DNA of 62,056 nucleotides, filler included, from Sluysia triapertura (taxonomy: Eukaryota): the NCBI GenBank assembly GCA_046118255.1. It is 4 parts of 4 records of this genome, joined end to end, with 100 filler letters (N's around TTAATTAATTAA, not from the genome) between each part and the next. Parts side by side here need not be neighbours in the genome. Positions count along the whole stretch, not along the records: positions 1 to 18,438 come from JBJNIA010136395.1; 3 more parts are not named here. The stretch is one strand, 5' to 3'. Of this stretch, positions 1 to 18,438 are shown piece by piece. The notes under the pieces are model-generated. The model was not told where the DNA came from. It ran no database searches and was given only the letters and a program-made list of their open reading frames with translations. The position numbers and the translations under genes were made by a program. Each line of letters begins with the position of its first letter. Positions within the stretch are counted from its first letter, which is position 1.

Positions 1-3000
1 CACATTCGTAAATTCATAAAGAAATGTGATAAATCTGTCGGTGTACAAATGATTTTACATGTTGGTTTCAAAAAAGACAATAAAAAGTGTGCCTGTAAAA
101 AATATCGCTTTTATTCCAAAAAGTTGTGCTGTTAGTTGATTATTGTGATAAATTTATAATCATTGTTTTTCTAATCATTTATTAACACATTATGAGCGGG
201 TATTCTTAAGTGACAGTACATAAAACGGGTACTAATATAGTCAGATTTTCAATAAGTTCGGTCCTGGTGGTTGTTTTATGGGTAGAAAGTCTTCTTCCAC
301 AGATAGTCTCCAGGCCAGAGTAGCAAATGTTAAGAAAACGAAAAAAACATATTATTCCTGTATATGCAGCAGCGTAACTGGCCTCTTACGAGCCATGTGC
401 ACGATATTAAATTCGGGCCCCATAACGTCAATATATAACGACTATTTTTATAAGAAACAGTATGCATGTTCGAAAAGTATATATAAATTAGCAAATTCAT
501 GTATTATAAAACGATTATATATGTATTCATTCGTCGGTCCCCTCAGGCCCACATTTATATATACATTTACCAAGGATTATAATAAATAAACAACAATATG
601 TTTTAATTATTTAATTAAATAATAATAATAATAATAATAATAGCTCTAATAAAATTTATCTTGAATATTTTCAGCCTGTAAACATCTTAAGTGTAAAATG
701 ACTCCTCCAAAATGCATTTTGGATCATATGTGGATAAAAAAGAAGACTTGTTTTATCAAAAAACACAAGAAATGTATTCCGGAATTACGAATTTATAAAA
801 AGCGAGTCGGTTAGTGAAACATAATCATCAAATATTGTAATAATTATAATAATAAGTAGTATAAAATAATGAATTAATTATTTTTTATTTTAGGTTGCTC
901 AAAAAAACATCGAATAAGTTATCATTGTTCACAGAAAACTTGTGTTGGTACAAAATCGATTCATTATTACGTTTTACATAAATGTAAATGTTTGAAACGT
1001 GTCAAGGTAAAGAAATTCACATGTTGTTGTCCAAATCCGCACAAATCGGTCAAATGTAAACATGACGTTTATGAAGTTAAATATGTTAAGTATAAATATA
1101 TACACAATCACAAGTCGTGTAAGAAGATAGTCGTTAAAAAACCTAAGCTGATTCGTAAGTTTAATTTATATATTACAATTTTATTTATTCATTATTATTC
1201 ACATTTTATCTACTTTCAAAATAATAGTAAAAAATAATTGTTAATTTTTATTTTTTTTGTGGACAAAACAATATATTCAAACAATTTAATACTTACAATT
1301 TAGAATGTACCAGAAAAGTTGTTCTGAAAAAGAAATGTAACAAGCGAACATGCAAAAAAGGATTAATTATTAAACTATTTAAAGTGGTACATTGTAAGTG
1401 CAAATTGATCAAAGTAAAACGATTATTTGGTAAATGTTGTTGTCCACCTAAACATAAGAAAATTAAATGTTACAAGAAACAAGGTATTATACAGCATGTT
1501 CAATTTAAATATCGACTTTACAAAGGCAGTTGCATGGCTCAAAAATTAGTCGAACAAGATAAAATATGTTAGTTTTAATTTTTATTCATTTATATACTAC
1601 TAATAATTAATAAGTAGATTATATTTGTAAATAATGTAATTGTTTTTTTTATTTTTTGTTACAGCTTGTAAAGGTATAAAATTTTTACGTTTCAAATGCA
1701 ATCATCATACAAAAAAGCGAATAATAAAAATAATTGCTCATGTTCGTGTTGGTTGTAAATGTAAACGAAGAGTTAGAATTATGAAAACTTTATGCGGTAA
1801 TTTATTGAATTTTTTTTCAATTTACGATCTCATTTTTAGCGTGTAAAAAACCGAAAATAATAAAAGGAAAATGTATTAAGAATTATCGATCTGTGTATCA
1901 AGTTGAATATCGATTAAAGAAATTAAAACATGGTCATAAATGTGTAAAAACAACATTGAAATTATNNNNNNNNNNNNNNNNNNNNNNNNNNNNNNNNNNN
2001 NNNNNNNNNNNNNNNNNNNNNNNNNNNNNNNNNNNNNNNNNNNNNNNNNNNNNNNNNNNNNNNNNNNNNNNNNNNNNNNNNNNNNNNNNNNNNNNNNNNN
2101 NNNNNNNNNNNNNNNNNNNNNNNNNNNNNNNNNNNNNNNNNNNNNNNNNNNNNNNNNNNNNNNNNNNNNNNNNNNNNNNTCCAGTACGCATTCGAAAATG
2201 TTACTATAATCATATAAAAATTCGAGAGATATTTTACAAATTGCGTCGTAAAGGTTATCGAAAATTTTGCCACATGAAAGACACTATTCGTTATCATTCT
2301 CTTAAGTGTTCATCTGGAAAAACGTATAAAACTAAATGTAAAAAATTTAAACGAAAATACGTAACCATTTTTTATCGACTGAAAAATTGTAAATGTTACA
2401 AAAAGCAATCGATAAAGATTCAAGCTTGTAGTAAGTATACTTTTAATTATTATTTTTAAAAATGGTTCTGATTATTTTTATTTAAAATTTTAAATTTTAG
2501 ATTGTCATAAACGCAACAAAAGTTATAGTTACTGTAAGCATGGTGTTATTACAACAATTAGTAAAAAATATTATTCAATGAAAGGATTTGTACGATGTTT
2601 AATGCATGCTACTTATAAAACCAAATCAATAAGTTAGTAGTATTTTGTGGAAATTATTTTTTAATTATATACATACTATTTATTAATATAAGTAACACAT
2701 TTTTCCAGATTGCCCAAAACAAAAACGAATTCAAGCAATTTCACATAAATGTGTTCTTCGAAAAGGATACGGATATTACAAACATTATCTGATAAGTTGG
2801 CATAAATTAGTCGGATGTAAATGTATCAAATTAACTAAAAACATATCAAAACTGTGTGGTTGTGTGAAAAATATGAAACGTATTAGATGTATTGCTGACG
2901 ATACATTGAAAATTTATAAACGTACTGTATTGAAGCTTGATCATGTTTGTTTACCAAGAAAAGAAATATCAACTAAAGATATACGTAAGAATGTTTAAAA

Positions 3001-6000
3001 ATATATATATTGTTTAATAAAGTTTATTTACTTTTGTTAGTGAGTAGATAAATAATATTTAAAAATAATATTTGTTTTATATATTATATAGAATGTCATG
3101 GAAAGGAATTGGAAATAAAGAAATATTCTTGTCATAAAATAGCCAAAGGAAAATGTTATCGTAAAATTAAAATAATTGAAAGATGGGTTAAAAATTGTAA
3201 ATGTCTTAAAAAAACGATATTAGTTCAACAAAGATGTTGTAAACCGAAACCAATTAAACGAAAATATTGTGACAAAAAACGTGGACAAAAAGTATCCGAA
3301 ACAACCAAATTTAAATTGGCATCAGGCAAAGTAATATATCGTAAAGGTGATTATGTTTTATTGGATAAAAAAGTTATCAAATCAACGACAAGACAGCGAC
3401 GTGATATTATTTGTCCATCAGCGTTTGTGCATGAAAAATGTGAAAAATCGTCTGGTCATTGGCAGCGTATTATTGGTTCATTTAAACGTATTGGTTGTAA
3501 ATGTGTAAAGAAGTTGAAACGAATTCACGGAAAATGCAGTAAGCTGTTTTTAAATATGAGTGATAATTGATTGATTTTCAATATTTTTATTAAATCCGAT
3601 TATCCATTTAAAAACACTGTTATAGCCAATTACATTTGACCTCATTTCTCACTAATGGCATTTTCAAGCAAATCATAAGTATACACTTTGTAATAAATAA
3701 TAGAGCTATATAAATTATTATTTTTCTATTCAGAATGCCCTCCGAAGAATGTCAAAATAAGTAAATGTCACAAACAATTCCAAACTATCCACATAACGGA
3801 GTATTATTTAATCGATCGACATTGTGTGTTATTTTCTCGTCGCACAAAACGAAGATGTGCCTGCCCAAAACCGATAAGTCGAATATATTGTGATGGTGAA
3901 GGAAGGTGGGTTCGGTGTGTAACGGAATTTAAATTTTCACACCAAAGCAACAGTTGTAGTCTGGAAAAACGATGTGTCCGTTGGAATCAGTTGTGTCAAG
4001 AATCGTACAGTGTAGAAGGTAGATCTTGTGATAAGAAAACAAAATTGCGTCAATTCAAATTCGTTTCATTTATATTGGATCATCATAAATGTAAATGCAA
4101 ACGACACGTATCAATATCTCATGAATATTGTTGTAAGTAAATTCAAAATTTAATTAAAATTTATTTATTGACAATTGGAAGTAGTATATATTTTGGTAAA
4201 TATTTTTATTTGAAAATAATAAAATGTACATTAAGTAATTCTGAATATTCTTCAAAAGGGGTCAAGACCAACAGTGGGTCACAGCACAAAAAGTGTGAAG
4301 ACCACTGCTTTATAAGATCGAATCATTTATTGATATTTTTATTGGCAAAATAAAAACATCCAATACAATTTTTAAATTTATAGCATCACTGAAAGTAGGT
4401 AACGTATTTGTGATATATATTGTATAATTAGAGTCAACATTTTTGTTTTAAAATTTAACCAATAAGATTACAGCATTTGAGATACAAGAAACTTGAACTA
4501 AATATTTCTTAAAATTCAAATTAAATGTATTATTATATGATTTCATTATATAATATTATTACTAGAACATGTAATAAGTAAATTACAGTTACAAATTTTC
4601 TAATGATTTTATTGGATAATTTTTTCTCATGATTCTATTGGATAACAACCAATTTATTTGAATTTTTATTGTTACCAAACAAATTTTGATTATGATCAGA
4701 TAATTATAATATTACTTTATTTTTATTGGTTAATTTAAATTTTTTAAGTTTACTAAAATTAAAAATTTTTTAAAAATAATTTAGATTGCAAACACAAAGA
4801 CAAAGTATCTACTAAGTGTATCGATAATGTTTTGATAACCAATAAAAAACATTATTCACTTCATATGGGTGTTTGTTTACCAACCAGAAGTCAAATTAAA
4901 AGTCAAATAAGTGAGTCGGTTTTGTTTTATTGTGATTGGTTAAGTTTACTTGGGCAATCAAATTAGATAATAAAATAGACAAAAAACAAAACATTTACCA
5001 ATAAGAATGCATTCTTAAAACATATGAAATATTTGGCAATAGAAACATTTTAAGAACTTTTAAACAAACTGTTAACATATTTAATTTTTGAATTTAAGAA
5101 ACATAAACATAAAATATAAGTATACAATCAAAACTTTTTAATAACTCATTATTTATTCTGTGCTTTGTCTGATAATATTCATTTTTGGCAAGATTTTCCA
5201 TGTTTTATTGGCATCTGCTTTTGATTGGTCATATTTTCTGGATGGATTTTTCATTTATCTTTCGTATTTGTTTGCAATTTTTCTTATTTTATCTTATTTA
5301 TGAACATACTTCGAGTTTACGTGTTTTCTGATAAATATTTTTAGATGTAAAGTAAATGCAATATAATTTTATTTTCAAGAATATTTATGAATGTATTAAT
5401 TATATGGAAAATAAACTCTCGATTATTTTATGGCACTTTTTCAGTTAAGCTTGATTCAATCATTATTTAATTCATTAAATTAGCGTCAGAAGTGTTTCAT
5501 TAACTGAACGATTGTTTATATAATATTATTTCCGAGTAAGTTCGAAAGAATTAAGATGCATGTTTAACATAATCAATTATTATTAGTTTAGTTACTTATT
5601 TTTGGCAGCAACTAAATTTGCGCAAATAATAAAAATAATAAAAGCGAGAAAAATATTTTTTGAAATTCAACGGAATATGAAACATATTTATTTCAGAATG
5701 CCCAGAACCCTATGTACAGGCAGGTAAATGTCACGATGACCTTCATGGAATTAAGAACGGTTTCAAATTCATTACTAAAACCGAATATCACAATGTCAAT
5801 TGTAAATGTATTAAAAAACAACGAAAATATCAACATCCATGCGGTAATTGGGTTTTATTTAGCGGATTTAATTTACTATAGATTGTAATTTAATTCATAA
5901 GCCGGAGACAATTAAATTTTGTAAACATGGTAACAAAATAGTTAAATTAATCAAGTATTATGCGTTACAGAAGAATAAATGTATTCCACGACAAAAACAT

Positions 6001-6007
6001 TATAAAG
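1..6007 (+). CDS. Partial multi-exon gene for a very basic Cys/Lys-rich tandem-repeat protein. Exons: <1-130, 675-809, 894-1154, 1304-1567, 1665-1796, 1840->1965 (gap), <2180-2430, 2501-2632, 2709-2984, 3092-3538, 3734-4132, 4785-4910, 5697-5843, 5882->6007 (gap)
   Basis: Hand-spliced at GT..AG sites, the exons read in frame without stops (e.g. KKCACKKYRFYSKKLC-S-CKHLKCKMTPPKC...; LHKCKCLKRVKVKKFTCCCPNP...; NVNCKCIKKQRKYQHPC-D-CNLIHKP). Recurrent CxC, CxCP and CC motifs. Start and end are not visible. Confidence 0.9.
1966..2179. other. Assembly gap (N run) inside the Cys-rich gene
   Basis: N run; coding sequence of the same repeat type on both sides. Confidence 1.
4174..5228. promoter_or_regulatory. 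Dense cluster of CCAAT/ATTGG pentamers in introns of the Cys-rich gene (candidate NF-Y enhancer)
   Basis: 13 occurrences counted by eye (4174, 4341, 4360, 4459, 4611, 4637, 4649, 4725, 4839 exonic, 4935, 4998, 5207, 5224); function is inferred. Confidence 0.4.
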
Positions 6008-6135
6008 NNNNNNNNNNNNNNNNNNNNNNNNNNNNNNNNNNNNNNNNNNNNNNNNNNNNNNNNNNNNNNNNNNNNNNNNNNNNNNNNNNNNNNNNNNNNN
6101 NNNNNNNNNNNNNNNNNNNNNNNNNNNNNNNNNNN
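6008..6135. other. Assembly gap (N run)
   Basis: N run. Confidence 1.
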
Positions 6136-6474
6136 TTAACTAATTCTTATTGATTGCACAAAAGAAAAAGAAATACGATATTATGCATTAATAAAATTAA
6201 TTTATACTTTATCATAGAAATTGTTGATAAAAGTGAAATTTTTATGGATCTAAAATGTTAATGAAAGAAAATCCACAAATTAAAGAAAAGAAAAAAAATT
6301 AAAAACTAAATAAATAATGGAACCGTTAATATAAATTTTATGTTGAAAATTCTTCTAAATTTTCAAATATCAGTGACAGATTATGCCAATTTCCTGACAT
6401 AAAAATCTTTTCTTAGATAATAAAATGAAATTATTTATGAGAAAAAGATACCTAGAACGCACTGCAATACTTCA

Positions 6475-6590
6475 ATTGGTTTATAAAACTAACCCCAATT
6501 ATTGGTTGATGCAACTAACGTTGTAATTTTTTGGATTGGAACATTTTTGAACTTTAAACAACCAATAAAAATCAAGTCTAGTATCATTGG
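6475..6590. promoter_or_regulatory. Second CCAAT/ATTGG cluster (6 sites in ~116 bp)
   Basis: Sites at 6475, 6495, 6501, 6535, 6562, 6586. Confidence 0.4.
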
Positions 6591-7937
6591 CTCGAATTAA
6601 TGAATGAGTCAATAAAAAATCTGTACCGAATGCAAACTTTGGAAATAAAGAACATTTTTCTCAAATTTAAATTAAAATTAAGAAAATTGAATGAGAAAAA
6701 GATATAATTATGTAAAGAAATTGTGAAATAAAATGTGATTCGTCAGTCCCCTACGATCGTATACTTATACACTTATGGGCTAGAATAATTAGTGGAGGTT
6801 TATTTTTAAATTAATGCGGTCAATCCTATCTTAAAACTTGTCTTAATTAATAATTATCTGCAAATTAATTCCTTAATTAATAATATTTAGTAATTGTCAG
6901 ATTTTCTACCGTGAAATTAAAAACAGTATGTTTAATTTTTCGACCATACTAAAAACAGTGTTCCTTACAAAAATTTCTAAATAAATAAATTTTAATAACC
7001 AAAAGTACATTAAATAACACGATTTATAAAAATTAAGAATACACAATTAGATAACAATAAATAATTGATAATAATATATTGTCAGATTGATATACAATCT
7101 ATAGTTAAAAAAATTAATTTAAATCTACAAGTCCCAATTAAAAGGACCGTTAGAAAAAGTTTATACACTGATTTTAAGTAACATTTAACTACCTATTAAA
7201 ACAGGTGCGACTTAATAATAACAAACTAACGATTACAGTAAACTTCTAACTAAGCAACAGTTAGAAACCAATATTAATTACTTAACTTTATGCTTAATGC
7301 TTGATGTTTTTAAAGTACTTTATGTATAACCTTGAAGAATGTTCACATATTGAATTAGTTAATATTGAATAGAAACTCATATATCCAAATAATTATAATC
7401 ATATTCATGTATAAACATTACAATTAGATTAGTTACCCAACAAATTTTTATTATTTAAAGCACTTATTGACTTTTCAATTGATTATTGATTATTATGTAT
7501 TTAATTTACATACATAATACAATATTAATCGTTATGACACTGTTTTGTTTATTTACATCATTGATCAAAGAATAAGTGATTTTTGTTAAACAAAATAATC
7601 GAAATGTTTTCAAAATTATTTTTTTTGTTTTATTTTAAATAAAATAAATAATTTAATTACAGGAAAAAAAGCAGTATTCAATTTTAAATATTAATTGATA
7701 TATTTTATTAATATATTGCAAGAAAGTCAATTTAATTTAATTGTTAAATATTATATTTTCCATTTATTTTTTAAATGAATATTCAAAAACATTATTTTTC
7801 AAATTGATTATAAAAATATCAAATTATAATTATAATTATTATTATTATTATAATTTGTTAATTAATTATTTAGTTAAATTGTTTTTATTATCTATCATTC
7901 AAATTTCAATTATAAATTTTTTATTGAATATTTAATA

Positions 7938-8009
7938 ATCATTATTATTATTATTATCAGTCATTATTATTATCATTATTATTATCATTATTATTATCAT
8001 TATTATTAT
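7938..8009. repeat. Imperfect (ATT/ATC)n microsatellite
   Basis: attattattatc repeats visible. Confidence 0.85.
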
Positions 8010-8265
8010 GTAATTAAAGAAAATTATTGATTGAAATTATACTTTTCGTTTAATTCACAGTGGGCCAAAAGAAGTAAAGAAATATTGTCCATAGGAACTG
8101 TTTCCATGAATACTGTGACTTCAAAATCAATAAAAACCGTAAATAATCTAATTGGATCGATTTGCACTAATCGATATTATTTAAATAATTATTATTACTA
8201 TTTGTAAATTTAATTTCATTTACACTGAAAAAATTAAATTAATAAAACTTATTATTATATTTTTT

Positions 8266-8297
<32 letters not shown>

Positions 8298-9106
8298 AGT
8301 TATTTAATGTATATATTTCCGTTTTTTATTTTTTACTAAAATAAAATCATATTTTAGATATATAAATATATTTTTTTTCAAATTTAATTATTATAAATAT
8401 TATATTAATATTTATCAATGAAGAAAATTCAGAATTTATAATCTTCAGTAATAAAAATAAATGAAACAAAGTTAACTGTAGGTGGTAAGACACACACTAG
8501 ATGAGCAGCAAAAATTACGAAATATAGGCTGTTATATTAATTGTATTGTTAAAAAGTGTAAATATCAATTAAAGAAAATGTCACTTATTGTTCATTCATT
8601 GATAGCTAGCAACATAGATTTTAGCAATGGTTTATTGTACTTGCTGTTCATTTTTCTAACACTTAACCAACGGCAAAATATTTTCTGAGTTTCAGCAACT
8701 TGATAAGTTAATAAATTCTAATTAATTCTAATCTCTCAACCTTAATACTTTATAAAATACTTAGGAGTATTTATGAATACTTTTTTCACACGATAAATAG
8801 AACCAAAATTCTAAAAACTTTATTATTTAAAAATTCTAATAATTTACAAAATAATTGTGATAGACAAACACAAAATAAAATAAATATTTAATTTACTCTG
8901 TATTTTGCACCTCAAAATATCGGCGAAAACTAATTTTTATCATTATTATTATCATTATTATTATTATATTTATTATATTATTATATATTATTATTATTAT
9001 ATTTTTTCTTTAAAGATTTAAATTTAAGTGCATTTTAAGATATTAATGTGGACCTTTTAGAAACTTCTCCAAAGCAATTTCGAATCCTTTGAATAGAATA
9101 AAACAA

Positions 9107-9313
9107 CTAAAAATTCCAAATGGCGGATTTCAAAATGGCCATTTTCATTAAACTGATACTAGTTTATACACTAGTCATCAACTAATGAGAATCGATGGAA
9201 TATTCTAGAACATTATAGAAACTTCTGTTATATTTTTCGAAGCGAATTTTCTTTTTTCAAAAAATAATTTCTTTTTTGGAAAATAATTATTTTGTAAGTG
9301 ATTTTAAAGATTT
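9107..9313 (+). repeat. Dispersed repeat family D, copy 1 (probable transposon-derived end)
   Basis: atttcaaaatggccattttcattaaactgatactagttta...cttttttcaaaaaataatttc...gtgattttaaagattt matches the reverse complement of 57700-57856. Confidence 0.8.
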
Positions 9314-9344
9314 ATACATAATTTTTATGCATTTTATATGATTG

Positions 9345-9735
9345 TAGAGGGTTGTGAAAACGACCCAATATACTCAATTTCATATAGAAGAATGAAAAAA
9401 TTACAATAATTAATCAAGCACCAATACTAATTCTCCAAGAAGATCCCATATAAGGAATTACATTGGTTGCCAAAGCCCTATATTACGTAAGTCTTGAATA
9501 TCACTTAGAAGTAAATAAAAATTTGGAAACCAAGATGAATATTTCATTGAGACATAATAATCTATACAGAATCAACAGTGATAACAAGTTAGGTGATAGG
9601 TGGTATACCATTTATGTTTCAAAAATATACAACCAGTACTACCAGAGAATGTCAAATTACTTGAAGATTATGAAATATTTAAGAAAAAGGCAAAGTTTCT
9701 GTTTCAAAAATATTAAAGTGAATGATTTATTTTAA
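9345..9735 (+). mobile_element. Degenerate 3' end of an L2/CR1-type non-LTR retrotransposon ORF2
   Basis: Across frameshifts reads YKELHWLP...KLGDRWYTIYVSKIYN..LPENVKLLEDYEIFKKKAKFLF, matching the L2/CR1 C-terminal pattern LxxLHWLP...GDRxFxxxAPKLWNxLPxxIR...FKKxLK. Confidence 0.65.
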
Positions 9736-10559
9736 GCGCGTTTGAGTACTTACTTTGCAGTAGATATGAGCGCAATATAAATTAATATATTATTATTATT
9801 GAATATTTAAAATGTTTAAAAATGAATCAAATTAGATTGTGAATGGTGATAAAATAAACAGCGTAACGTTATCTAAAATTCCAATATAATATTATAGAAT
9901 ACATAAATTATCTGAACAGCGAAAAAGTGTGGTTAATGTTAATGATAAATTAATGAACGAAATAAATTATTTGCTATATAAACGATTGGATTAGTTTGAT
10001 TGAAAAGAACTCTCAGGACAAAATATTTTTTTGATCCAACTGTGTATTGAAATGATTTGTGATTTCAAATAAACATTCAGTGAATTATGTCGATTTTACC
10101 AATAATACAGTTCACAATTTATTTGACTGCCTTCTATTTTGGATCCCGGAGAACAACACTTCATATAACAATATCTGATTATTTTCATTAGTTTTGGCCA
10201 ATAAATATTTTATTATTAAATAAAACCTTTCTTTTATTCAATGTTTTGGTTGTAACGAATATTTGTTTCTGCTATGTATAATTTTTAAGATTACAGAAAA
10301 ATTATCTCTATTAATATTAAAATCTCTTCATCACTCAATTTATGTGATAAAATACTTTTAAACATTATGAACAGTCCTTTACATTTAATGAAGTTTAATT
10401 CCATAAGATATTCACTAAAAAGATTAACAAAATGAACATATAATTTATTCAAAATATTAAAAATTTTATTATTTAAATTTCTGTCTTGGTTTTGTTTTCC
10501 CTGAACATATTTCGAGCGAATAATTTTGATAGTTCTGAAAGTCACCATCGCTGGCGTCT

Positions 10560-11140
10560 TAAACCGGAATCACAATAGGAAAATGCCTCACACGACATGT
10601 ATCCATGATTCAAAGCATTTGTCGTCGAGAGTGCGGACCAGTTAAAAGAATGATTGGTAGGTTGTGTTTGATTAATTGTTTTCGGCTTAACATAGAAGCT
10701 ATGACAGTACATGAATTAAATGTTTCGATTTATTGCATTTACGTGACTGTTTTAGGAAATTATATCTCCTTATTGTATAGAAATCTATAGAAGCGTTAAC
10801 AATTTGAAAATGTTTTCTTCCACAGATATCAACATTAGGACATCTAGTTAATTCTTTGTTTAACTTATCTGTACGTGATATTAAGTACATATTGACAATA
10901 TCGAGGGGATATGTTGTCGTTTTCATAAATATTTTGAATTCTTTTATAGACCATCTACTTTTGATCAGCGTAGTTACGTGAAAAGAATTAATTTCAAAAG
11001 TTGCTGTCATGTCTAGTAATGTCAGGATACTAAGTAAATAACGTGTTTGATTGTTAACTATCATCATATATATTATATCTTGATAAAGATAACTATAATT
11101 ACAAATGCTGTGCAGATTAAAACTTGGTATGAGCATTTAA
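10560..11140 (-). mobile_element. Degenerate gag-like ORF1 of a LINE (I/Jockey type) with decayed CCHC knuckles
   Basis: ORF 10699-11136 ends ...RRYNFLKQSRKCNKSKHLI (knuckle 1, first Cys to Ser), followed out of frame by TGPHSRRQ and TCRVRHFP (knuckle 2 and 3 remnants). Confidence 0.4.
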
Positions 11141-11749
11141 TCTAAATGTATACATTTAATCGGAATAGATACTGTGGCCGTGGATCATGTATGATTGATA
11201 ATGTTGGATGGTACCATCGCAAAGTAGTATCATTCGATACATTGACACTTTCATCTGATTCTTTATCTTTGTGCAAGTCGTTAGTGGAATGCTATTTTGA
11301 TTAATCGGGTTTTGTAGTGACAGGTAAATTCGAATAATTATTATGTGGTATTTTCAAGAATTCACTTGATATACCGTCAGTTTTATAGCTCGGTTTCAAA
11401 AAATTGATTCCGCACTGATAAGTTCTTTGAGAAGATAATTTGAATGAGACGTTAATGCTGAATTTAAGAACGAAGGATTTAATCTGTCTGATGATGTTAC
11501 TAAATCTGAATTACTTTCAGATCTATGGCATTAGTAGGTTGGTGAGTAGTCATAAGATTTGTCATCATATTACCGGGTAAATTAGTGGTATTCATGCTAA
11601 TATTGTTACCGGTAGATTGATATTGATTGAAAATTCTCAATAAATTGTGATTATTAGCATAATTCAATATTTATGTTATATGGTCACCATTGTTTGAATA
11701 CCATTTAAATTAATTGTATTAGTATAATGAATGGTATTATTCTTTGAAT

Positions 11750-12348
11750 TATTACTGTTATCATTATTGTTGCTATTTTCTAATGATTTTTTAATACATA
11801 CGTTTATAAAATTTATTATACTAAATCAATGATATAATGACAAAGTACAAAAGATGCCTGGATTTAAAAACAAAAATATGAATTCCTTTACTTTGAATTT
11901 ACACGATCTGTCTGTTATTTCTTTTATTTCTTGATATATTAAAATATGTTTAAAGTAGTTAAATGTCTTTAGATGTCTGAAGGTTAAATGTTTTAGTGTT
12001 GAAAACTTACGATTTCATTATTTTGAAATGATATAAATATTTTACTTAGATTTTAAATGTAAATTGATGATATGACTGAAATTGTTGTTTGAATGTTAAG
12101 AGATTGTGAATTCCAAATATGTTGAAAGAGAGTAGTTTCGTGGAAGTGGATTAGATAAATTATAGGCTATGTTTTGGTAAATTCAAAAAGGTAATTGTGT
12201 GATGATTTTGGTTATGTTAATATTGAACTATGTATGAAGATATTTATGATGAATTATTTTTGAATGTGAATTGTAGACTTTGAGGGTGAGTGAGGTTTGT
12301 TGTGTTGTAAGGAAAAATTTTAATAAAGGTGAAAGGTTGGCCACCACA
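11750..12348. repeat. Dispersed repeat family B-like copy ending in ...GGTTGGCCACCACA
   Basis: G/T-skewed sequence; tgaatgttaagagattgtgaattccaaatatgttgaaa resembles 28890-28925; terminus shared with 29122 and 35540; left boundary approximate. Confidence 0.6.
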
Positions 12349-12702
12349 AATGTTTCTATTATTAAGAGTCTAAAATAATAATGTATGGAATTTTAATTTA
12401 AGAACACAGACCAGTACTGAACTAACACTCTTCAAGTAAAATTTATAAAAGTTGTAAAGAGAACTTAATTTAGATTAAGAATCATTAGATTAATAATTAA
12501 GATTTAGTAAAGAATCATAGAAAATAAACACCGAAGTAATTTATAAATATAAAGTTAACATTTAAAATAACGGTATGCTATTAAAGAAATGCAAATTAAA
12601 TTATCAGATTTTATACAAGGTACAAGTTAAAAAACTTCTTAAGGATCAGAATTTCAAGATCCACGAGTTCGAAGAATAAATTTCGGAGAATTAAAGAGAA
12701 CC

Positions 12703-13059
12703 NNNNNNNNNNNNNNNNNNNNNNNNNNNNNNNNNNNNNNNNNNNNNNNNNNNNNNNNNNNNNNNNNNNNNNNNNNNNNNNNNNNNNNNNNNNNNNNNNN
12801 NNNNNNNNNNNNNNNNNNNNNNNNNNNNNNNNNNNNNNNNNNNNNNNNNNNNNNNNNNNNNNNNNNNNNNNNNNNNNNNNNNNNNNNNNNNNNNNNNNNN
12901 NNNNNNNNNNNNNNNNNNNNNNNNNNNNNNNNNNNNNNNNNNNNNNNNNNNNNNNNNNNNNNNNNNNNNNNNNNNNNNNNNNNNNNNNNNNNNNNNNNNN
13001 NNNNNNNNNNNNNNNNNNNNNNNNNNNNNNNNNNNNNNNNNNNNNNNNNNNNNNNNNNN
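12703..13059. other. Assembly gap (N run)
   Basis: N run. Confidence 1.
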
Positions 13060-13309
13060 AGTAATGGACAAACAATTTCATTTCAAATTTATTAAATGTC
13101 GAAATTAAAAATTAATATTTAATATTAAAACTAAATTTAATGTTTTTTTTGGAAATTTATTTGTTTTAATTTAATATATTAATTAGTACACCATTTTCTT
13201 TTATAGTAAACTCAATATTTTCTTAGTTATTTATTAAAATTTAGAAAATTTGAATTTATTGTTAATTTAAACAAATAGTATATTATTTACTAAAAATGTT
13301 TTGTTCTTT

Positions 13310-13310
<1 letters not shown>

Positions 13311-13363
<53 letters not shown>
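13311..13363. repeat. (TAA)n microsatellite
   Basis: About 17 perfect units. Confidence 0.95.
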
Positions 13364-13912
13364 CGTGGTTTTAATAATTTTAACTATTACTGAATTTCCA
13401 TTATAATTTTATTAAGCAAAAATTTAATAAACAATTTAATATTTCTTGTCTTTATTTCCGTTTTATTAATTTCTTCTAGACTATTAATAATGACAACAAT
13501 GACTAATTGTAGTTAATTATTTTATTTAAGTAATATTACTACTAAATAGCTATTAAATAATTTTAAATATATAAAATTAATGCCTGTTTTTAAAATTTGG
13601 TTTTCAAATTATTTAATTATTATAATTTGTATAGTGTTTTTGGCTCCTTTTTAACTTGCAGCGAATAATAATCATTTAACATTTTCACCAATCATCATTC
13701 ACCAATTCAGTTGTACAATAATTTACATTTATTTCATATTATGTAGGAAAGAAAGTCTTATCCGATAGAAAATAATATTTATTTACTAATAAAGACACTA
13801 CGTAAATTGAAAAATATAAAATGTAAATCTAAAAAATTTCAATGTTTTATTAAATCCTTTTTTAAGTGTTAAATTTCTATCTTATAATTAAATAATTGTT
13901 TCGTGGCATATG

Positions 13913-14093
13913 ATGGAGTTTAAAAGAAGTGACTTGAAAAAGCTGAAGTATTTTTGTGGAAAGATGTACCAACAATTGAGAAGATTAACTCCGTGCTTGG
14001 TATCGGTACTGTATCTGCAAGAAACTGCCAGCGAATAATTGCAAAATTTCATCGTTGATGATGAAGAGAGATGTGGTTAAAGATGATGTTTTG
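13913..14093 (+). mobile_element. mariner transposase N-terminal (HTH) remnant
   Basis: TIEKINSVLGIGTVSARNCQRIIAKF..VDDEERCG resembles the mariner pattern AxRNINxVFGEGTVSERTCQRWFAKFRSG..LEDEERSG. Confidence 0.75.
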
Positions 14094-14103
14094 TTTATAT
14101 ATA

Positions 14104-14382
14104 GAGTGGTGGCCAAATTATTAGACTAAAACAGGAAAAATGTGATTTTCTTTGGTGGTCCATCAAAAAATTGGTCGTTTGAGAAAATGTGTCACAAAGA
14201 AGAAATGATAGATATTTGGTGAAACTTTCTACTATGAATCATAAAGCTACTAGTATGACTTTGCAGAACCAGCTAGAGACTTGCAGAATTCACAGTAAGA
14301 AAGAGAGTACAATGAGACGACTCAGGAATGATCAGGAACATCAGTATCCTTGAAAAATGGTCTAATAATTCGACCTCCACTG
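14104..14382 (+). mobile_element. Internally deleted Tc1-like element (279 bp) with TIRs and TA target-site duplication
   Basis: TA-gagtggtggccaaattattagac ... gtctaataattcgacctccactg-TA; internal RNDRYLVKLSTMNHKATSMTLQNQL...STMRRLR is a Tc1 transposase DNA-binding fragment. Confidence 0.85.
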
Positions 14383-14905
14383 TAATTCATTGATATTAAC
14401 TTTGTTTAGCTCATTTTTAATGTTTTTATTAACATCTATAGATGGTTATCTTTTATCATGTTTATCTTCTAATGCATTATTTTCATGTATTATAATAATG
14501 TATTATTATTATTGTTATTTTTTGGTGTTTTACTATAATTTTTTAAACAACTGCACATCGTCTTAACGGTTATATTTATCATTATACATTAAATTAATAG
14601 CAAAAAAAGTAAAACAAAACAAAACAAAATAAAATAACAAATCGAAATTTGTAATAGAAACTGTTTGAGAATATTTCTCATGCTGTAACATTTTTACAAA
14701 AAACCCTATATATATAAATACTCATAGCACACAGTGGTAGAAATATTTCAACTTGCATAATAAATACTTTAAAAGTCAACTGAATAAGTAAAATATCATG
14801 AAAAAAACAATTTCTTTATAAAATTCTCTTCTAAATGCAGTATTTAATGCTTGTAAATAGTAAATATGAATATTGCTTTGTTTATTAAATATTATACCTG
14901 AATTA

Positions 14906-14930
<25 letters not shown>
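14906..14930. repeat. (TA)n microsatellite
   Basis: About 12 units. Confidence 0.9.
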
Positions 14931-14936
<6 letters not shown>

Positions 14937-16674
14937 GTGTAATGTTGAAGTAAATAAGTGTAAGTTCATTTACATGAAATGTGGCAATATATGTTCAGTA
15001 ATTCATAAATGTTAGCATCAGTAATAAGCATAAATTCTTCTGCTAATTTAATCTGTAAAATTTAGCTGAAACTTATAAGTCGTAAACCATTGAATAAGCT
15101 CAAACGAACTCTGTCTTATAATTACTATTGTTCATCTAAACTTGTTTTACGAATTTATTTTATAAGTGATATCTATATTATATATGTATCTTATCTCAGT
15201 TGTTCGAAATGGAAGTGCTTAACAAAAGTTTTAATACTTGAAACTTTATTTTATTTTACATAACTCAATTCGCTCGATTCGCTTCATAAAAAGTTTTAAT
15301 TCAACTTTAAACTTTTTGACACACATTTTGTTGCTCACCAGTTAGTATTAAAATCAATTTAGTTTTAATACTAATCACTTTTAATTGTACAATAATGAAT
15401 GTGTGTTACCTAAACGAATATGTTTTCTAAATGACAATAATGAATTCTTGTTATTGGCAACAAACTCTAGAACAGAATAAACGAATATTCTTGTAATTCA
15501 TCTACAATGTGTTAACAAGTTTACATTAGACATTTATTCCAAATGTATTCATTTTGGGAAATCGCATAAGAAAAAGTTTCATAATGTATTTTCGATTGTT
15601 TGTTTGGCTATGAAATGACATTTCAAGGTCACCAAAATTAATTTGATGATTGTAATTACGATTATTCTTCAAATATTCGTAATTTCACTTAAAATATGAA
15701 TTCAAATTAAGTTGCCAAATGTATATATTAAGATATTCTTTTTTCCAAAAACGTTTGCTTCAAATACTGTTAGTTGTTAGTTTATTTTAAATTATTTAAA
15801 TTAGTTTATTTTAGTTTAAATTAAATTAAATTATTAAGTAAAATCCAAACCTAATATGCGTAGTATATTTATTAAATAACATTAGTGCATGAAGCATTAT
15901 ATTTAACTACTAAAATTATATTTATTTATCCACTAACACCCACGATATACATGTAGAGATTTATGATAGAATTTACGTCATACTTTTAATTTGTACTATA
16001 TTTACGATAAAATATTCAATTTAAATAATTAATAATTAATTTAATAAAAAATGTACCATAAACTAAGATAGTAATTATAATATCTAGAGGAAAATAATTT
16101 TGTTTTTTTTATTAAATATAATAATAAAATGATAAATAAATAATAATTATTACAGTAGTAATAGAAATATATATTTTTTATAACTACTAAGGTTATAACG
16201 GAAATAAAAAATTACTTATATTTTAAAGAAACTATTTTAAATACCTTAAAAGAAAGTAATCTTTTATTTACTTTTATTGTTCCTTGCCAGTTAATGTTCA
16301 TCATCTTATTTGATAATAACTATTATTTTATATAAATTTGTTGTCTACACTTTTCGAATGTTTCTTGTAACTTTACTATTTATATAAAAATTAAAAGCTT
16401 TTGTCTACTAAGTATTAATGGAAATAAACTAAACACATAACAAAATAAAGAAGAAATATAGATAGAAAAAATGAACAATATTCAAAGAAATGTTAATAGT
16501 AATGATTTTTAAAAAGTAATATAATATTTTCCAATTAAATTTATGTTTATTTGTTTTGATAAACCTTGTAAAAATGTAATAATAAAGTAAATAAAAAAGT
16601 TAAATATCATATTGATTGAAAATTTTCATAAACCAAGTGAAATAATGATTTTAAAAACAATCAATAAAAACAAA

Positions 16675-17045
16675 ACTTCTGCCAGCAATCTGCAAGTTTT
16701 TGGATATTGTCAAAGTACCATTCTTTGACACACTTTCTGAACCTCATGGGATCACTTAAACGACGACGTTTTCATAAGAATTTTTTTTGTTTTGAAAAGA
16801 CTAGTTATGGCTTTGAATTGTTTTATGCAACATTTGATACTTTTCAATCAGTGCACTGTAAACTCGATCAAACTGCTCGCAGTAAAGCTAAGTTTTCAAA
16901 CTTCAAGATTCTTTCAAAGTTCCACTAAACGGAAATATTTTAACCAAATTTTTCTATTGTTCTGTTAAATAGAATTTATTTCATTAACTTTAGACTTACT
17001 CTTGATATAGTTTTCAATTTCACTTCTCCATCTTTCAATTAAGAT
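16675..17045 (-). mobile_element. mariner transposase catalytic/C-terminal remnant
   Basis: Reverse strand gives YCEQFDRVYSALIEK, NNSKP (like DNARPH) and EWYFDNIQKLADCW (like FYxxGIQKLVxRW), with stops and frameshifts. Confidence 0.75.
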
Positions 17046-17142
17046 AAGTAAAACCCCGAAGGTTAATCCATCAAGTGAAAAAAGATTTATTTACTTAGGA
17101 TATAAACTCAAGGAATAAAATCACTTAAAACAAACTCAATTA

Positions 17143-17236
17143 TATTATAACTATTATTATCATTATTATTATCATTATTATTATCATTATTATTATTATT
17201 ATCATTATTATTATTATCATTATTATTATTACTATT
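17143..17236. repeat. Imperfect (ATT/ATC)n microsatellite
   Basis: Visible trinucleotide run. Confidence 0.85.
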
Positions 17237-18363
17237 AATTTATATTTTATATAAGTCATGCAACAGGAAAACCGTTATTAAATCTCCGATAATTAAAAGT
17301 GATATACACATAAATTCAAGTAGTATTATTGTATGAGACAAAAAAACTAATAATTTTTAAAAATTGAAATGCACAAATTTGTTTCCCCAGAGTACAACAT
17401 TACCGTTTAAATTATGTATTATCGCGTGACAATTATATTCTTCCGTTCTCATATTACACTCTATTATGTAAAATTTTATTTGATATAATATTTACTACAT
17501 ATCAGTTTTTAATTATTGTTATTAAGAAAAATATCAATTATATATAGTTATTATAATTATTGTTATTAGTATTATCTTTATTATTATTCTTATTATTTCA
17601 AACATTGCCAATTATTAAAAACTTTTCTAATAATATAATGTCTACGATTATAAAGTATTTCAACAAGGAAGTTAATGTTTTGGAAATACTTAATAATAAC
17701 ATCCATAAATAATTATTTTTATTCCCATAATTTGGACAATTCTGTTCATCAAAACACAAAAAGTTATATTCATCGAAACAATTAAAATACAACGATCCAT
17801 AAATTATGTATATCAATTAATAATTATCTTTATTATTATTATTATTGTTATTATTATTATTTAATATTAGCAATAAATTATATTTAATTTTGTGTACCCA
17901 TTAATCTTAATAAATTACTTATAATTAATATTAATAATAATAATAATTATTATTATTATTAAACTATAATTATTGTCAAATTATTTTTATAATAATTATT
18001 AAATTATAATTAAATTGTTCATTTATGCATCAAAATAAATTGACAAGTTTAATGTAAAGGTGCCCAAACTAGGGGGCGAGTCCCCGGATGGGAGCGCTAA
18101 AAATTTTAAAAATGTTAGATTTTACAAACAAAGATTTGTTTTTCTTTTGTTGTTTTTTACCAATTCAAGTAATTCCATCACCTAACTCCATAATTTACGT
18201 TCTTGATGTTGAACGGTCATCAAGGAAAAAAATTTCAGAGCAAATATACTTACAAATTCATAAAGCAATTATACATGTGCACTAGAGATGTTATGCTATT
18301 GGGTATGCTTCAATTTTTAGCTGTTAATTAAAAATAAGTATCACAATCGCGAAATAGCAGCTA

Positions 18364-18438
18364 TTAACCTCTTGTCGCCCGGTGAGTCGTATACGACTCA
18401 AACTGAAAACTATAATTTATTGAACAAATGCCTTTACT
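18364..18438 (+). mobile_element. piggyBac-like element end, truncated by the gap
   Basis: TTAA-CC start followed by the perfect 18-bp subterminal palindrome TGAGTCGTATACGACTCA (18383-18400). Confidence 0.55.

What the first reader, a model, noticed from the sequence alone, without database searches (positions are those of the whole stretch)
1..6007. Cys/Lys-rich protein built from a ~44-aa module with an all-phase-1 exon array
Seen: all 12 resolvable introns are phase 1 and split the codon just before a module-initiating Cys (ag|NN TGY). Complete exon lengths are 126, 132, 132, 135, 147 nt (one module), 261, 264, 276 (two) and 399, 447 (three). Modules roughly alternate between a C-x(8-11)-C...CxC...C form and a form with fewer cysteines. 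The Cys spacing is kept while the intervening, very Lys/Arg/His-rich residues diverge. Established: symmetric 1-1 exons are typical of exon-shuffled extracellular modules, and the dipteran Balbiani ring 3 silk protein is a conceptual analogue. Inference: this is a possibly unnamed disulfide-bonded repeat domain in a secreted, polycationic structural, adhesive or cuticle protein. Any exon could be skipped without a frameshift, which would allow combinatorial isoforms.
Basis: partly seen in the sequence, partly recalled or inferred. Interest (0 to 1): 0.8.

Follow-up and report, generated by a model that had tools for sequence, protein, structure and literature searches.

The report
Giant secreted flatworm cysteine-repeat protein fragment
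The region holds 14 exons from the middle of a very large secreted flatworm protein made of a small, unnamed disulfide-rich beta module repeated dozens of times, with uncharacterised orthologues in tapeworms, flukes, monogeneans and free-living flatworms.

Summary
Fourteen exons on the + strand (1-6007) are joined by 12 resolvable introns. All are phase 1, and every acceptor reads ag|NN TGY.

The modules alternate strictly between type A (C-x9-10-C-x17-21-CKC-x10-C) and type B (C-x8-9-C-x~20-C). A and B are homologous (hhalign 95%), but the working unit is the ~88-aa A+B pair.

No Pfam family, solved structure or known fold matches the unit. A profile of it does find 127 proteins, and every named one is from a flatworm. 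Some reach 5,275 aa with 49 units, a signal peptide and a VWA domain, plus weaker PAN-like and ShK-like matches near the C-terminus.

The window's exons line up in order with Echinococcus EUB62272, Echinostoma VDP67309 and Macrostomum A0A1I8GF89, including module-specific oddities. The window therefore holds the middle of an orthologous giant gene. The genome uses the flatworm mitochondrial code and also contains vertebrate host DNA.

AlphaFold models (pLDDT 96) show each module as a short strand plus a long beta-hairpin.

The most likely role is a secreted, disulfide-locked, strongly basic extracellular scaffold. The tissue and the binding partner are unknown. Free exon skipping is untested and looks unlikely.

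The parts
1..130 (+). Exon E1, one type A module. The exon starts 11 nt upstream of the window (contig 116), after ttttag|AA TGT, and is 141 nt in full.
675..809 (+). Exon E2, 135 nt, a B-type variant module, phase 1-1
   Evidence: matches P0004 1412-1456
894..1154 (+). Exon E3, 261 nt, one A+B unit
1304..1567 (+). Exon E4, 264 nt, one A+B unit. This is the unit folded by AlphaFold (pLDDT 96.3).
   Evidence: P0004 1554-1637
1665..1796 (+). Exon E5, 132 nt, type A module
1840..1965 (+). Exon E6, a type B module cut by the assembly gap after 41 codons plus 1 nt. It follows a 43-nt intron.
1966..2179 (.). Assembly gap. The two flanks are consecutive modules in the Echinococcus orthologue, which has a B-B junction there ('...LRSEPCKCPLSRTTRRC'). 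The nominal length of 214 nt would keep the frame (1+214+1=216).
2180..2430 (+). Exon E7, the end of a B module plus an A module. Its 5' end lies in the gap.
2501..2632 (+). Exon E8, 132 nt, type B module
   Evidence: P0004 1838-1874, P0001 2202-2244
2709..2984 (+). Exon E9, 276 nt, one A+B unit
   Evidence: P0004 1891-1971
3092..3538 (+). Exon E10, 447 nt, modules A-B*-A. B* lacks two cysteines and carries an insertion, exactly as in the orthologues.
   Evidence: P0001 2349-2487, 36% identity, E 3e-28
3734..4132 (+). Exon E11, 399 nt, modules B-B'-A. This is the best conserved stretch, with the motif CACPKPIxRIYCDGEGRWVKC. It was folded at pLDDT 95.8.
4785..4910 (+). Exon E12, 126 nt, type B module
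5697..5843 (+). Exon E13, 147 nt, type A module
5882..6007 (+). Exon E14, a type B module cut by the second gap (6008-6135). It follows a 38-nt intron.

Best explanation
WHAT IT IS. Positions 1-6007 encode about 1,000 residues from the middle of a very large secreted flatworm protein. It is the orthologue of Echinococcus granulosus EUB62272 (5,275 aa), Clonorchis CSKR_202890, Echinostoma VDP67309 and Macrostomum A0A1I8GF89.

HOW IT IS BUILT. The protein is a long chain of ~44-aa modules. Each module is predicted to be a short strand plus a long beta-hairpin. The modules come in two homologous, alternating types:
- type A: C-x9-10-C-x17-21-CKC-x10-C
- type B: C-x8-9-C-x~20-C
One A and one B together form an ~88-aa unit. 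The unit has four conserved disulfides and one optional one, and at least one disulfide links A to B.

INTRONS. The introns sit at module borders, always in phase 1, in the codon before the module's first cysteine.

INFERRED FUNCTION (not shown). After secretion the chain acts as an extended, disulfide-locked, strongly basic extracellular scaffold or fibre. The basic surface would bind polyanions such as glycosaminoglycans or mucins. The VWA domain (a strong Pfam match in the orthologues), together with the weaker ShK-like and PAN-like stretches near their C-termini, would dock other matrix components. Those regions are not in this window.
For: GENE MODEL.

A/B HOMOLOGY: hhalign probability 95%, E 3e-8.

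CYSTEINE CO-OCCURRENCE in 284 near-full units: C16-C44 phi 0.93, C11-C43 phi 0.58, C45-C75 phi 0.57. There are 5+3 conserved cysteines.

RELATIVES:
- The profile search found 127 proteins at E<=1e-3 and 27 at E<=1e-30, with up to 49 units in one protein.
- All named hits are Platyhelminthes.
- The exons line up in order with P0004 1412-2351, P0001 about 1850-2700 and P0002 1138-1447. Shared oddities include the Cys-less B with an insertion, the B-B' pair, and the B-B junction at the gap.

SECRETION AND OTHER DOMAINS IN RELATIVES:
- Hydrophobic, signal-peptide-like N-termini.
- VWA in P0001 (E 4e-18) and P0142.
- ShK above the Pfam cutoff in the same-genome paralogue L014 (E 5e-7).

STRUCTURE AND CHARGE:
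- AlphaFold models are all-beta, with pLDDT 96.3 and 95.8.
- All family members tested are net basic, from +3% to +23%.

INTRONS IN ANOTHER SPECIES: the Cichlidogyrus gene P0016 has 4 introns, all phase 1, and 3 of them read ag|NN TGY CC.
Against: - There is no RNA evidence for the splice junctions or for expression.
- The N-terminus (signal peptide) and the C-terminal VWA, ShK-like and PAN-like part of this gene are not on this contig.
- No further exons lie in 6136-18438. The gene may be truncated, the scaffold may be misjoined at the 6008-6135 gap, or a long intron may follow.
- The function is inferred only from architecture and charge. No member of the family has been studied, as far as I could find.
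- I could not read the AlphaFold coordinates, so the disulfide map rests on covariation and parity alone.
- In the orthologues the PAN and ShK matches fall below Pfam's cutoffs.
Confidence: 0.75

Rival explanations
1. The protein is a gland product rather than a general matrix protein. It could be a cohesive or adhesive component of attachment secretions, or of eggshell, cement or hook material, whose positive charge and cysteines drive coacervation and cross-linking.
For: - The window protein has extreme charge (+23%), 9.5% Cys, 5.4% Tyr and 5.5% His.
- Known flatworm glues are very large, Cys-rich and Lys/Arg-rich secreted proteins (PMC6410801, PMC9229212).
- One Macrostomum family member, P0134, joins the units to a stretch that UniProt labels VWFD and whose C-terminal sequence is printed. 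I read that stretch by eye as VWD/C8/TIL-like and did not scan it.
- The organism is very likely a parasite that attaches to a vertebrate host.
Against: - The described adhesive proteins Mlig-ap1/ap2 and Tmed-ap1-3 have other architectures: vWD, C8, TIL, EGF, TSP1, and low-complexity KR/GRK repeats.
- The orthologues in Echinococcus and the flukes are only mildly basic (+3% to +8%).
- Module-by-module conservation from Macrostomum to tapeworms looks more like a core structural protein than a fast-evolving glue.
Confidence: 0.2
2. The all-phase-1 exon array is used to make many isoforms by skipping module exons.
For: Every complete exon is symmetric 1-1 and a multiple of 3 in length, so any of them can be dropped without a frameshift.
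Against: - No RNA data exist.
- Single-module exons carry an odd number of conserved cysteines (A has 5, B has 3), so skipping one would leave unpaired cysteines.
- Each module has its own positional orthologue in distant flatworms.
- In Cichlidogyrus most of these introns are absent: the last coding exon is 1,913 nt. The array therefore cannot be a conserved splicing device.
Confidence: 0.1
3. The exons are a decaying or truncated gene copy (a pseudogene fragment), not part of a working giant gene.
For: - No exons follow E14 in the remaining 12 kb.
- The continuation was not found with one query.
- The assembly is very fragmented, with 263,945 contigs.
Against: - None of the 14 exons has a stop codon or a frameshift, in DNA where I estimate a stop about every 11 codons.
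- All cysteines and all splice signals are intact.
- Identity to the orthologues is highest in the same stretches that are conserved among the orthologues themselves.
- Other contigs carry pieces that match upstream parts of the orthologues.
Confidence: 0.05
4. It is an intracellular basic protein, for example a chromatin or sperm nuclear protein, and not a secreted one.
For: Very high Lys/Arg content and a pI of 10.07.
Against: - The cysteine positions are conserved in even-numbered sets with covarying pairs.
- Relatives have signal-peptide-like N-termini and VWA and ShK domains.
- The predicted fold is all-beta and disulfide-type.
Confidence: 0.02

Closest known systems
Echinococcus granulosus EUB62272 / W6UV63 (auto-named 'Collagen alpha-3(VI) chain') and its flatworm orthologues: Clonorchis CSKR_202890, Echinostoma VDP67309, Sparganum SprV_0501750900, Macrostomum A0A1I8GF89
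   Same: - They contain the same ~88-aa A+B unit (profile E down to 2e-216, 49 units).
- The modules come in the same order and show the same oddities.
- Identity is 30-40% over E10 and E11.

   Different: - The window holds only about 1,000 residues from the middle. The signal peptide, the VWA domain and the C-terminal ShK-like and PAN-like parts are not on this contig.
- The window protein is far more basic (+23% against +3% to +13%).
- These proteins are uncharacterised. The 'collagen' name comes only from the VWA domain.
Other giant modular matrix proteins built from tandem small disulfide-rich modules (fibrillin, hemicentin, SCO-spondin). This comparison is from my own knowledge.
   Same: - Secreted, thousands of residues long, with dozens of tandem disulfide-stabilised modules.
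- Each module is individually conserved between species.
- Introns lie at module borders in phase 1.
- An adhesive VWA-type domain is present.
   Different: The module here is not EGF, TB, Ig, TSR or LDLa. No Pfam model matches it.
Thrombospondin type 1 repeat and pleiotrophin/midkine domains; bacterial G5/E repeats (SasG, Aap)
   Same: They are elongated three-stranded single-layer beta modules. Pleiotrophin is also Lys-rich and binds heparin (from my own knowledge). These appear as weak structural hits with Z 3.2-4.1.
   Different: Z below 5 is within noise for this search. The WxxW and CSxTCG motifs are absent, there is no Pfam hit, and the cysteine pattern differs.
Flatworm adhesive proteins Mlig-ap1/ap2 and Tmed-ap1-3 (PMC6410801, PMC9229212)
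   Same: They are very large, secreted, Cys-rich and Lys/Arg-rich, with long repeats, and they come from flatworms.
   Different: Their architectures are vWD-C8-TIL, EGF, C-type lectin, TSP1, and 221-330-aa repeats or low-complexity KR/GRKHS regions. I could not compare sequences directly, because the ap sequences were not at hand.
Chironomus Balbiani ring 3 silk protein
   Same: A cysteine-containing repeat protein split by many introns.
   Different: It comes from a different phylum. No similarity was tested, and the analogy adds nothing now that true orthologues are known.

Membership tests
Flatworm giant tandem A+B-unit proteins (EUB62272-like; unnamed family) | Tandem ~88-aa units that match the unit profile | tested here: met
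   The window exons score E 7e-23 to 2e-5 against the unit profile. The same profile finds 127 proteins.
Flatworm giant tandem A+B-unit proteins (EUB62272-like; unnamed family) | Modules line up in order with the orthologues, including module-specific variants | tested here: met
   E2, E4 and E7-E13 map in order to P0004 1412-2351 (E7 weakly, score 70). E8-E12 map in order to P0001 2202-2656. E10-E12 map to P0002 1138-1447.
Flatworm giant tandem A+B-unit proteins (EUB62272-like; unnamed family) | N-terminal signal peptide | not testable with these tools
   The 5' end of the gene lies beyond the contig start. Signal-peptide-like N-termini are seen only in relatives.
Flatworm giant tandem A+B-unit proteins (EUB62272-like; unnamed family) | VWA domain plus ShK-like and PAN-like stretches towards the C-terminus | tested here: not met
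   No such exon lies in 6136-18438. These parts are present in P0001 and P0142 and presumably lie on other contigs.
Any Pfam-A family (for the repeat module) | A match at or near the gathering score | tested here: not met
   Ten window exons and six paralogue pieces gave no relevant family at E<=10; the one row returned was a NusG_add match at E 0.026, below its cutoff. P0007 (3,665 aa) gave none at 0.01.
C-terminal cystine knot (CTCK). UniProt labels one 180-aa family fragment this way. | A CxGxC plus CxC knot signature and a match to Cys_knot-type models | tested here: not met
   The unit has CxC but no CxGxC. No Pfam hit. The fragment P0139 consists of ordinary A+B units.
Thrombospondin type 1 repeat | WxxW and CSxTCG motifs, and a TSP_1 model match | tested here: not met
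   The motifs are absent from the consensus. No Pfam hit. Structural Z is only 3.2.
Flatworm adhesive proteins (Mlig-ap1/ap2 type) | vWD-C8-TIL, EGF or TSP1 domains, and KR low-complexity or 221-255-aa repeats | tested here: not met
   None of these is present in the window exons. The architecture is taken from PMC6410801. I made no direct sequence comparison.
Balbiani ring 3 silk protein | Sequence similarity to BR3 repeats | not tested
   No BR3 sequence was at hand. All relatives found are flatworm proteins.

The most novel reading that the evidence does not exclude
The ~44-aa module (paired as A+B) is a previously undescribed extracellular domain family with no detectable relative in Pfam or the PDB. 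It may be confined to flatworms. It builds a set of giant proteins conserved from Macrostomum to tapeworms. These would then be a lineage-specific core component of the flatworm extracellular matrix or host interface, and a flatworm-only extracellular target in parasites.
Probability: 0.5. Interest if true: 0.6.

Novelty: new variant of a known kind. Interest (0 to 1): 0.5.

Why it matters
Flatworms include major human and livestock parasites, and their extracellular matrix is poorly known. This family is very large, conserved across all the main flatworm groups sampled, secreted, and built from a module that no database names. It currently carries misleading automatic labels such as 'collagen alpha-3(VI)' and 'CTCK domain'.

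Defining the domain would correct those annotations. It would also give a handle on a flatworm-only extracellular protein, with possible uses in localisation, RNAi and antigen work. The domain is small and confidently predicted, which makes it a good subject for structural study.

The finding also gives a clean example of module-border phase-1 introns that are kept in one lineage and lost in another.

Tried and rejected
- WORD-BASED PROTEIN SEARCH with the 1,469-aa paralogue ORF: no hit.
- ESM Atlas feature search: no usable hit.
- FOLD SEARCHES: Foldseek against the PDB on both models gave a best E of 0.08-0.47. VIA-align wide gave a best Z of 4.4-4.5. The Atlas shape search gave TM <= 0.52, and only to bacterial beta proteins. 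I treat all of these as noise.
- PDB SEQUENCE PROFILE SEARCH: nothing.
- RNA EVIDENCE: only one DNA run holds the stretch. I did not use read laying, because DNA contigs cannot show splicing and laying them across the gaps risked reading the gap letters.
- SPECIES IDENTIFICATION through a cox1 fragment: best identity 73%, with no organism names. The window is not Protopolystoma (28-33% identity to its family members) and is not close to Cichlidogyrus.
- CONTINUATION OF THE GENE in this genome, searched with Cichlidogyrus P0016:440-914: nothing at E<=1e-5.
- LITERATURE SEARCHES by accession number and by keyword found no description of the family.
- The open frame at 236-586 is not an exon. It is made of interspersed repeats.
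- tRNA and Rfam scans were empty.
- I did not send the joined (spliced) protein to any search or folding tool. All searches were exon by exon, by reference. The joined translation was made only in local scripts for composition.

Full report
**The observation**

The + strand of 1-6007 carries 14 exons. In window coordinates they are:
- E1 1-130
- E2 675-809
- E3 894-1154
- E4 1304-1567
- E5 1665-1796
- E6 1840-1965
- E7 2180-2430
- E8 2501-2632
- E9 2709-2984
- E10 3092-3538
- E11 3734-4132
- E12 4785-4910
- E13 5697-5843
- E14 5882-6007

The contig extends 126 bases upstream of the window. There E1 begins with ttttag|AA TGT CCT, which makes it a complete 141-nt exon behind an (ATT/ATC)n microsatellite at the contig edge.

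Every acceptor reads ag|NN TGY after a pyrimidine tract. Every donor is gtaagt, gttagt, gtaatt or gtgagt. All 12 resolvable introns are phase 1.

Two numbers put this beyond chance. Twelve out of twelve introns in one phase has a probability of about 2e-6. By my estimate from the base composition, this ~23% GC DNA has a stop codon about every 11 codons, so open frames of up to 149 codons are not accidental.

Two introns are only 38 and 43 nt long. From my own knowledge, that fits the very short introns typical of parasitic flatworms.

The 983 residues seen contain K 21.6%, C 9.5%, R 6.4%, H 5.5% and only 4.5% D+E.

**The gap at 1966-2179**

E6 is a type B module. It enters the gap after 41 codons plus one base, so it is almost complete. 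E7 leaves the gap inside another type B module that lacks only its first few residues.

Two B modules in a row break the usual alternation. However, the Echinococcus orthologue has exactly such a B-B junction at the corresponding place: '...CVKKVKVLRSEP-CK-CPLSRTTRRC...' against the window's '...CVKTTLKL[gap]PVRIRKC...'. The two flanks are therefore consecutive parts of one gene in the right order.

With the nominal 214 N the frame is kept (1+214+1 = 216). Because the gap length is only an estimate, that is a one-in-three coincidence at best and proves nothing. The gap may hide a few codons, an intron, or both. I did not fill it.

**What the modules are**

Alignment of the modules gives two types:
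- Type A: C-x9-10-C-x17-21-C-K-C-x10-C
- Type B: C-(P)-x8-9-C-x~20-C-x~11

The order along the gene is A B A B A B A B | B A B A B* A B B' A B A B. The true period is therefore an A+B unit of about 88 residues, and introns have been kept at some module borders and lost at others.

A and B are homologous to each other: profile-profile comparison gives probability 95%, E 3e-8.

I looked at cysteine presence and absence in 284 near-full units taken from all relatives. The cysteines covary in pairs:
- C16 with C44, phi 0.93 (an optional fifth disulfide)
- C11 with C43, phi 0.58
- C45 with C75, phi 0.57

A has five conserved cysteines and B has three. At least one disulfide must therefore join A to B. 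I infer C1-C32 and C30-C54 from the A/B homology, but that is inference, not a result.

**Relatives**

Pfam gives nothing for the unit, even at E<=10.

In the same genome (619 Mb, 263,945 contigs), the unit profile finds at least nine further contigs. One of them carries a 1,469-aa intron-free ORF on C203585 that ends in a ShK domain (PF01549, E 5e-7, above the cutoff). That ORF is the orthologue of a separate ~1,700-aa subfamily, represented by P0011.

I searched a profile of 22 units against 1.84 billion representative proteins. It found 127 proteins at E<=1e-3 and 27 at E<=1e-30, with up to 49 units in a single protein.

Every hit that carries a name comes from a flatworm:
- Echinococcus granulosus (5,275 aa, auto-named 'Collagen alpha-3(VI) chain')
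- Macrostomum lignano
- Sparganum proliferum
- Echinostoma caproni
- Paragonimus kellicotti
- Clonorchis sinensis
- Dicrocoelium dendriticum
- Dibothriocephalus latus
- Protopolystoma xenopodis
- Cichlidogyrus casuarinus

Ten family members of 600 aa or more begin with a strongly hydrophobic, signal-peptide-like N-terminus. In several of them a module start follows within a few residues.

P0001 and P0142 carry a strong VWA domain. They also have weaker PAN and ShK matches near the C-terminus, both below Pfam's cutoffs.

**Orthology**

Compared exon by exon, the window lines up in order with three proteins:
- Echinostoma P0004: residues 1412-2351
- Echinococcus P0001: about 1850-2700 of 5,275
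- Macrostomum P0002: 1138-1447, for E10-E12

The shared details are specific:
- The B module in E10 lacks two cysteines and carries the same insertion ('KLASGKVIYRKGDYVLLDKKVIK' against 'KLSPAKVLFESGDLTIWDQVPKA').
- E11 holds the B-B' pair with the conserved motif CACPKPIxRIYCDGEGRWVKC...CVRW.
- E14 starts CNL..., as in Echinococcus.

Identity to positional orthologues is 30-40% over E10 and E11 (E down to 2e-38). Identity between units within the protein is 19-32%. The array is therefore old and each module is kept individually. It is not a recently amplified or homogenised repeat.

The window thus holds roughly the middle fifth of a giant gene. Other small contigs carry pieces that match upstream parts of the orthologues.

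Nothing of the family lies in 6136-18438. What follows E14 is unresolved: a long intron, a scaffold misjoin at the second gap, or a truncated gene.

**Introns in another species**

The annotated Cichlidogyrus gene for P0016 has four introns, all phase 1, and three of them read ag|NN TGY CC. One sits exactly where the intron before E11 sits. The stretch corresponding to E11 and E12, and everything after it, is a single 1,913-nt exon.

The phase-1 module-border rule is therefore shared between species. The dense intron array is not.

**The organism**

The assembly holds an AT-rich mitochondrial contig. Its cox1 recovers the conserved Asn residues only if AAA is read as Asn (GGFANW, PRLNNFSFW, DRHFNTSFF). 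That is the flatworm/echinoderm mitochondrial code.

The assembly also holds three GC-rich cox1 contigs that look teleost-like. I take these for host DNA, not human, and did not pursue them.

The organism is therefore very likely a parasitic flatworm of a vertebrate, probably a fish. The species could not be named. It is neither Protopolystoma nor close to Cichlidogyrus.

**Structure**

AlphaFold2 on the E4 unit, with the 22-unit alignment, gave pLDDT 96.3. On E11, with 15 orthologues, it gave pLDDT 95.8. Both models are all-beta. Every module is a short strand followed by a long two-stranded hairpin.

No solved or predicted structure matches convincingly:
- Foldseek against the PDB: E >= 0.08
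- VIA-align: best Z 4.5
- Atlas shape search: TM <= 0.52
- PDB sequence profile: nothing

The weak rows include other elongated three-stranded modules (SasG E/G5, TSR domains, pleiotrophin). This is a resemblance in general shape, within noise. It is not evidence of kinship.

**How it probably works**

Shown:
- The repeat architecture.
- The conserved cysteine sets and covarying cysteine pairs.
- The flatworm-wide orthology.
- Secretion-type features and a VWA domain in relatives, plus a ShK domain in a same-genome paralogue.
- A net positive charge in every member tested (+3% to +23%).

Inferred:
- The secreted protein forms a long, disulfide-locked chain of beta modules that serves as an extracellular scaffold.
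- Its basic surface binds polyanionic partners.
- The VWA domain, with the ShK-like and PAN-like stretches, provides further contacts.

The extreme charge in this species is only partly a matter of base composition. The swap of R for K fits the AT bias. The loss of D and E does not, because GAA and GAT are AT-rich codons too.

A gland product (glue, cement, eggshell or hook material) is the main rival. The known flatworm adhesive proteins are similar in size, charge and cysteine content, but they have other domain architectures (PMC6410801, PMC9229212).

Combinatorial exon skipping is arithmetically possible. Three things speak against it: cysteine parity, module-by-module conservation, and the absence of most of these introns in Cichlidogyrus. 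No RNA data exist to test it.

**Novelty**

The gene is not an orphan. Orthologues are deposited, but as 'hypothetical', 'VWFA domain-containing', 'Collagen alpha-3(VI)' or 'CTCK domain-containing' proteins, and I found no paper on them.

The module has no Pfam model and no structural relative. I rate it a new variant of a known kind, namely modular disulfide-rich giant extracellular proteins. It is of moderate interest.

**Limits**

- The splice sites are predicted, not observed.
- The ends of the gene are missing.
- Model coordinates could not be inspected.
- The taxonomic range rests on the named subset of hits.
- The joined spliced protein was never sent to a search or folding tool. All such calls used single exons by reference. 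The joined translation was used only in local scripts for composition.

Noticed in passing
window 241-520 (inside intron 1): Two adjacent interspersed repeat insertions, 72-81% identical to copies on many other contigs (1,726 first-look candidates). They explain the 117-codon open frame at 236-586, which is not an exon.
   Followed up: partly
window about 13750-14350: A decayed Tc1/mariner-type transposase remnant. There are weak HTH_48 (E 0.015) and HTH_Tnp_Tc3_2 (E 0.025) matches in short open frames interrupted by stops.
   Followed up: partly
G000 contigs C219470, C200653, C192378 (L024-L026): Three GC-rich (47%) vertebrate, teleost-like cox1 contigs in the assembly. I take them for host contamination of a parasite sample, not human. 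I did not pursue them.
   Followed up: no
G000:C243991 (L027:1501-2835): An AT-rich mitochondrial cox1 whose conserved Asn positions are encoded by AAA. This is the flatworm/echinoderm mitochondrial code. Its best named-free match is only 73% identical, so the species stays unidentified.
   Followed up: partly
G000:C203585 (L014:3380-7786): A paralogue with a 1,469-codon intron-free exon of the same units, ending in ShK domains. It is the orthologue of a separate ~1,700-aa subfamily (P0011, 28% identity end to end). The family therefore has at least two ancient branches with very different intron densities.
   Followed up: partly
window 10294-11136, minus strand: Open frames of 145 and 92 codons in a locally GC-richer stretch (up to 32%) with no Pfam match. 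Their nature is unknown.
   Followed up: partly
window 1797-1839 and 5844-5881: Introns of only 43 and 38 nt next to introns of 544-786 nt in the same gene, i.e. a two-peaked spread of intron lengths.
   Followed up: no
proteins P0001 and P0139 (public records): The automatic names 'Collagen alpha-3(VI) chain' (Echinococcus EUB62272) and 'CTCK domain-containing protein' (Macrostomum A0A1I8HBY8) look like misnomers. They seem to be caused by the VWA domain and by the CxC motif of the unit.
   Followed up: partly
window 7823-8009, 8933-9000, 13311-13363, 17139-17237: Many (ATT)n/(ATA)n microsatellites. One also forms the left edge of the contig, just upstream of E1.
   Followed up: no
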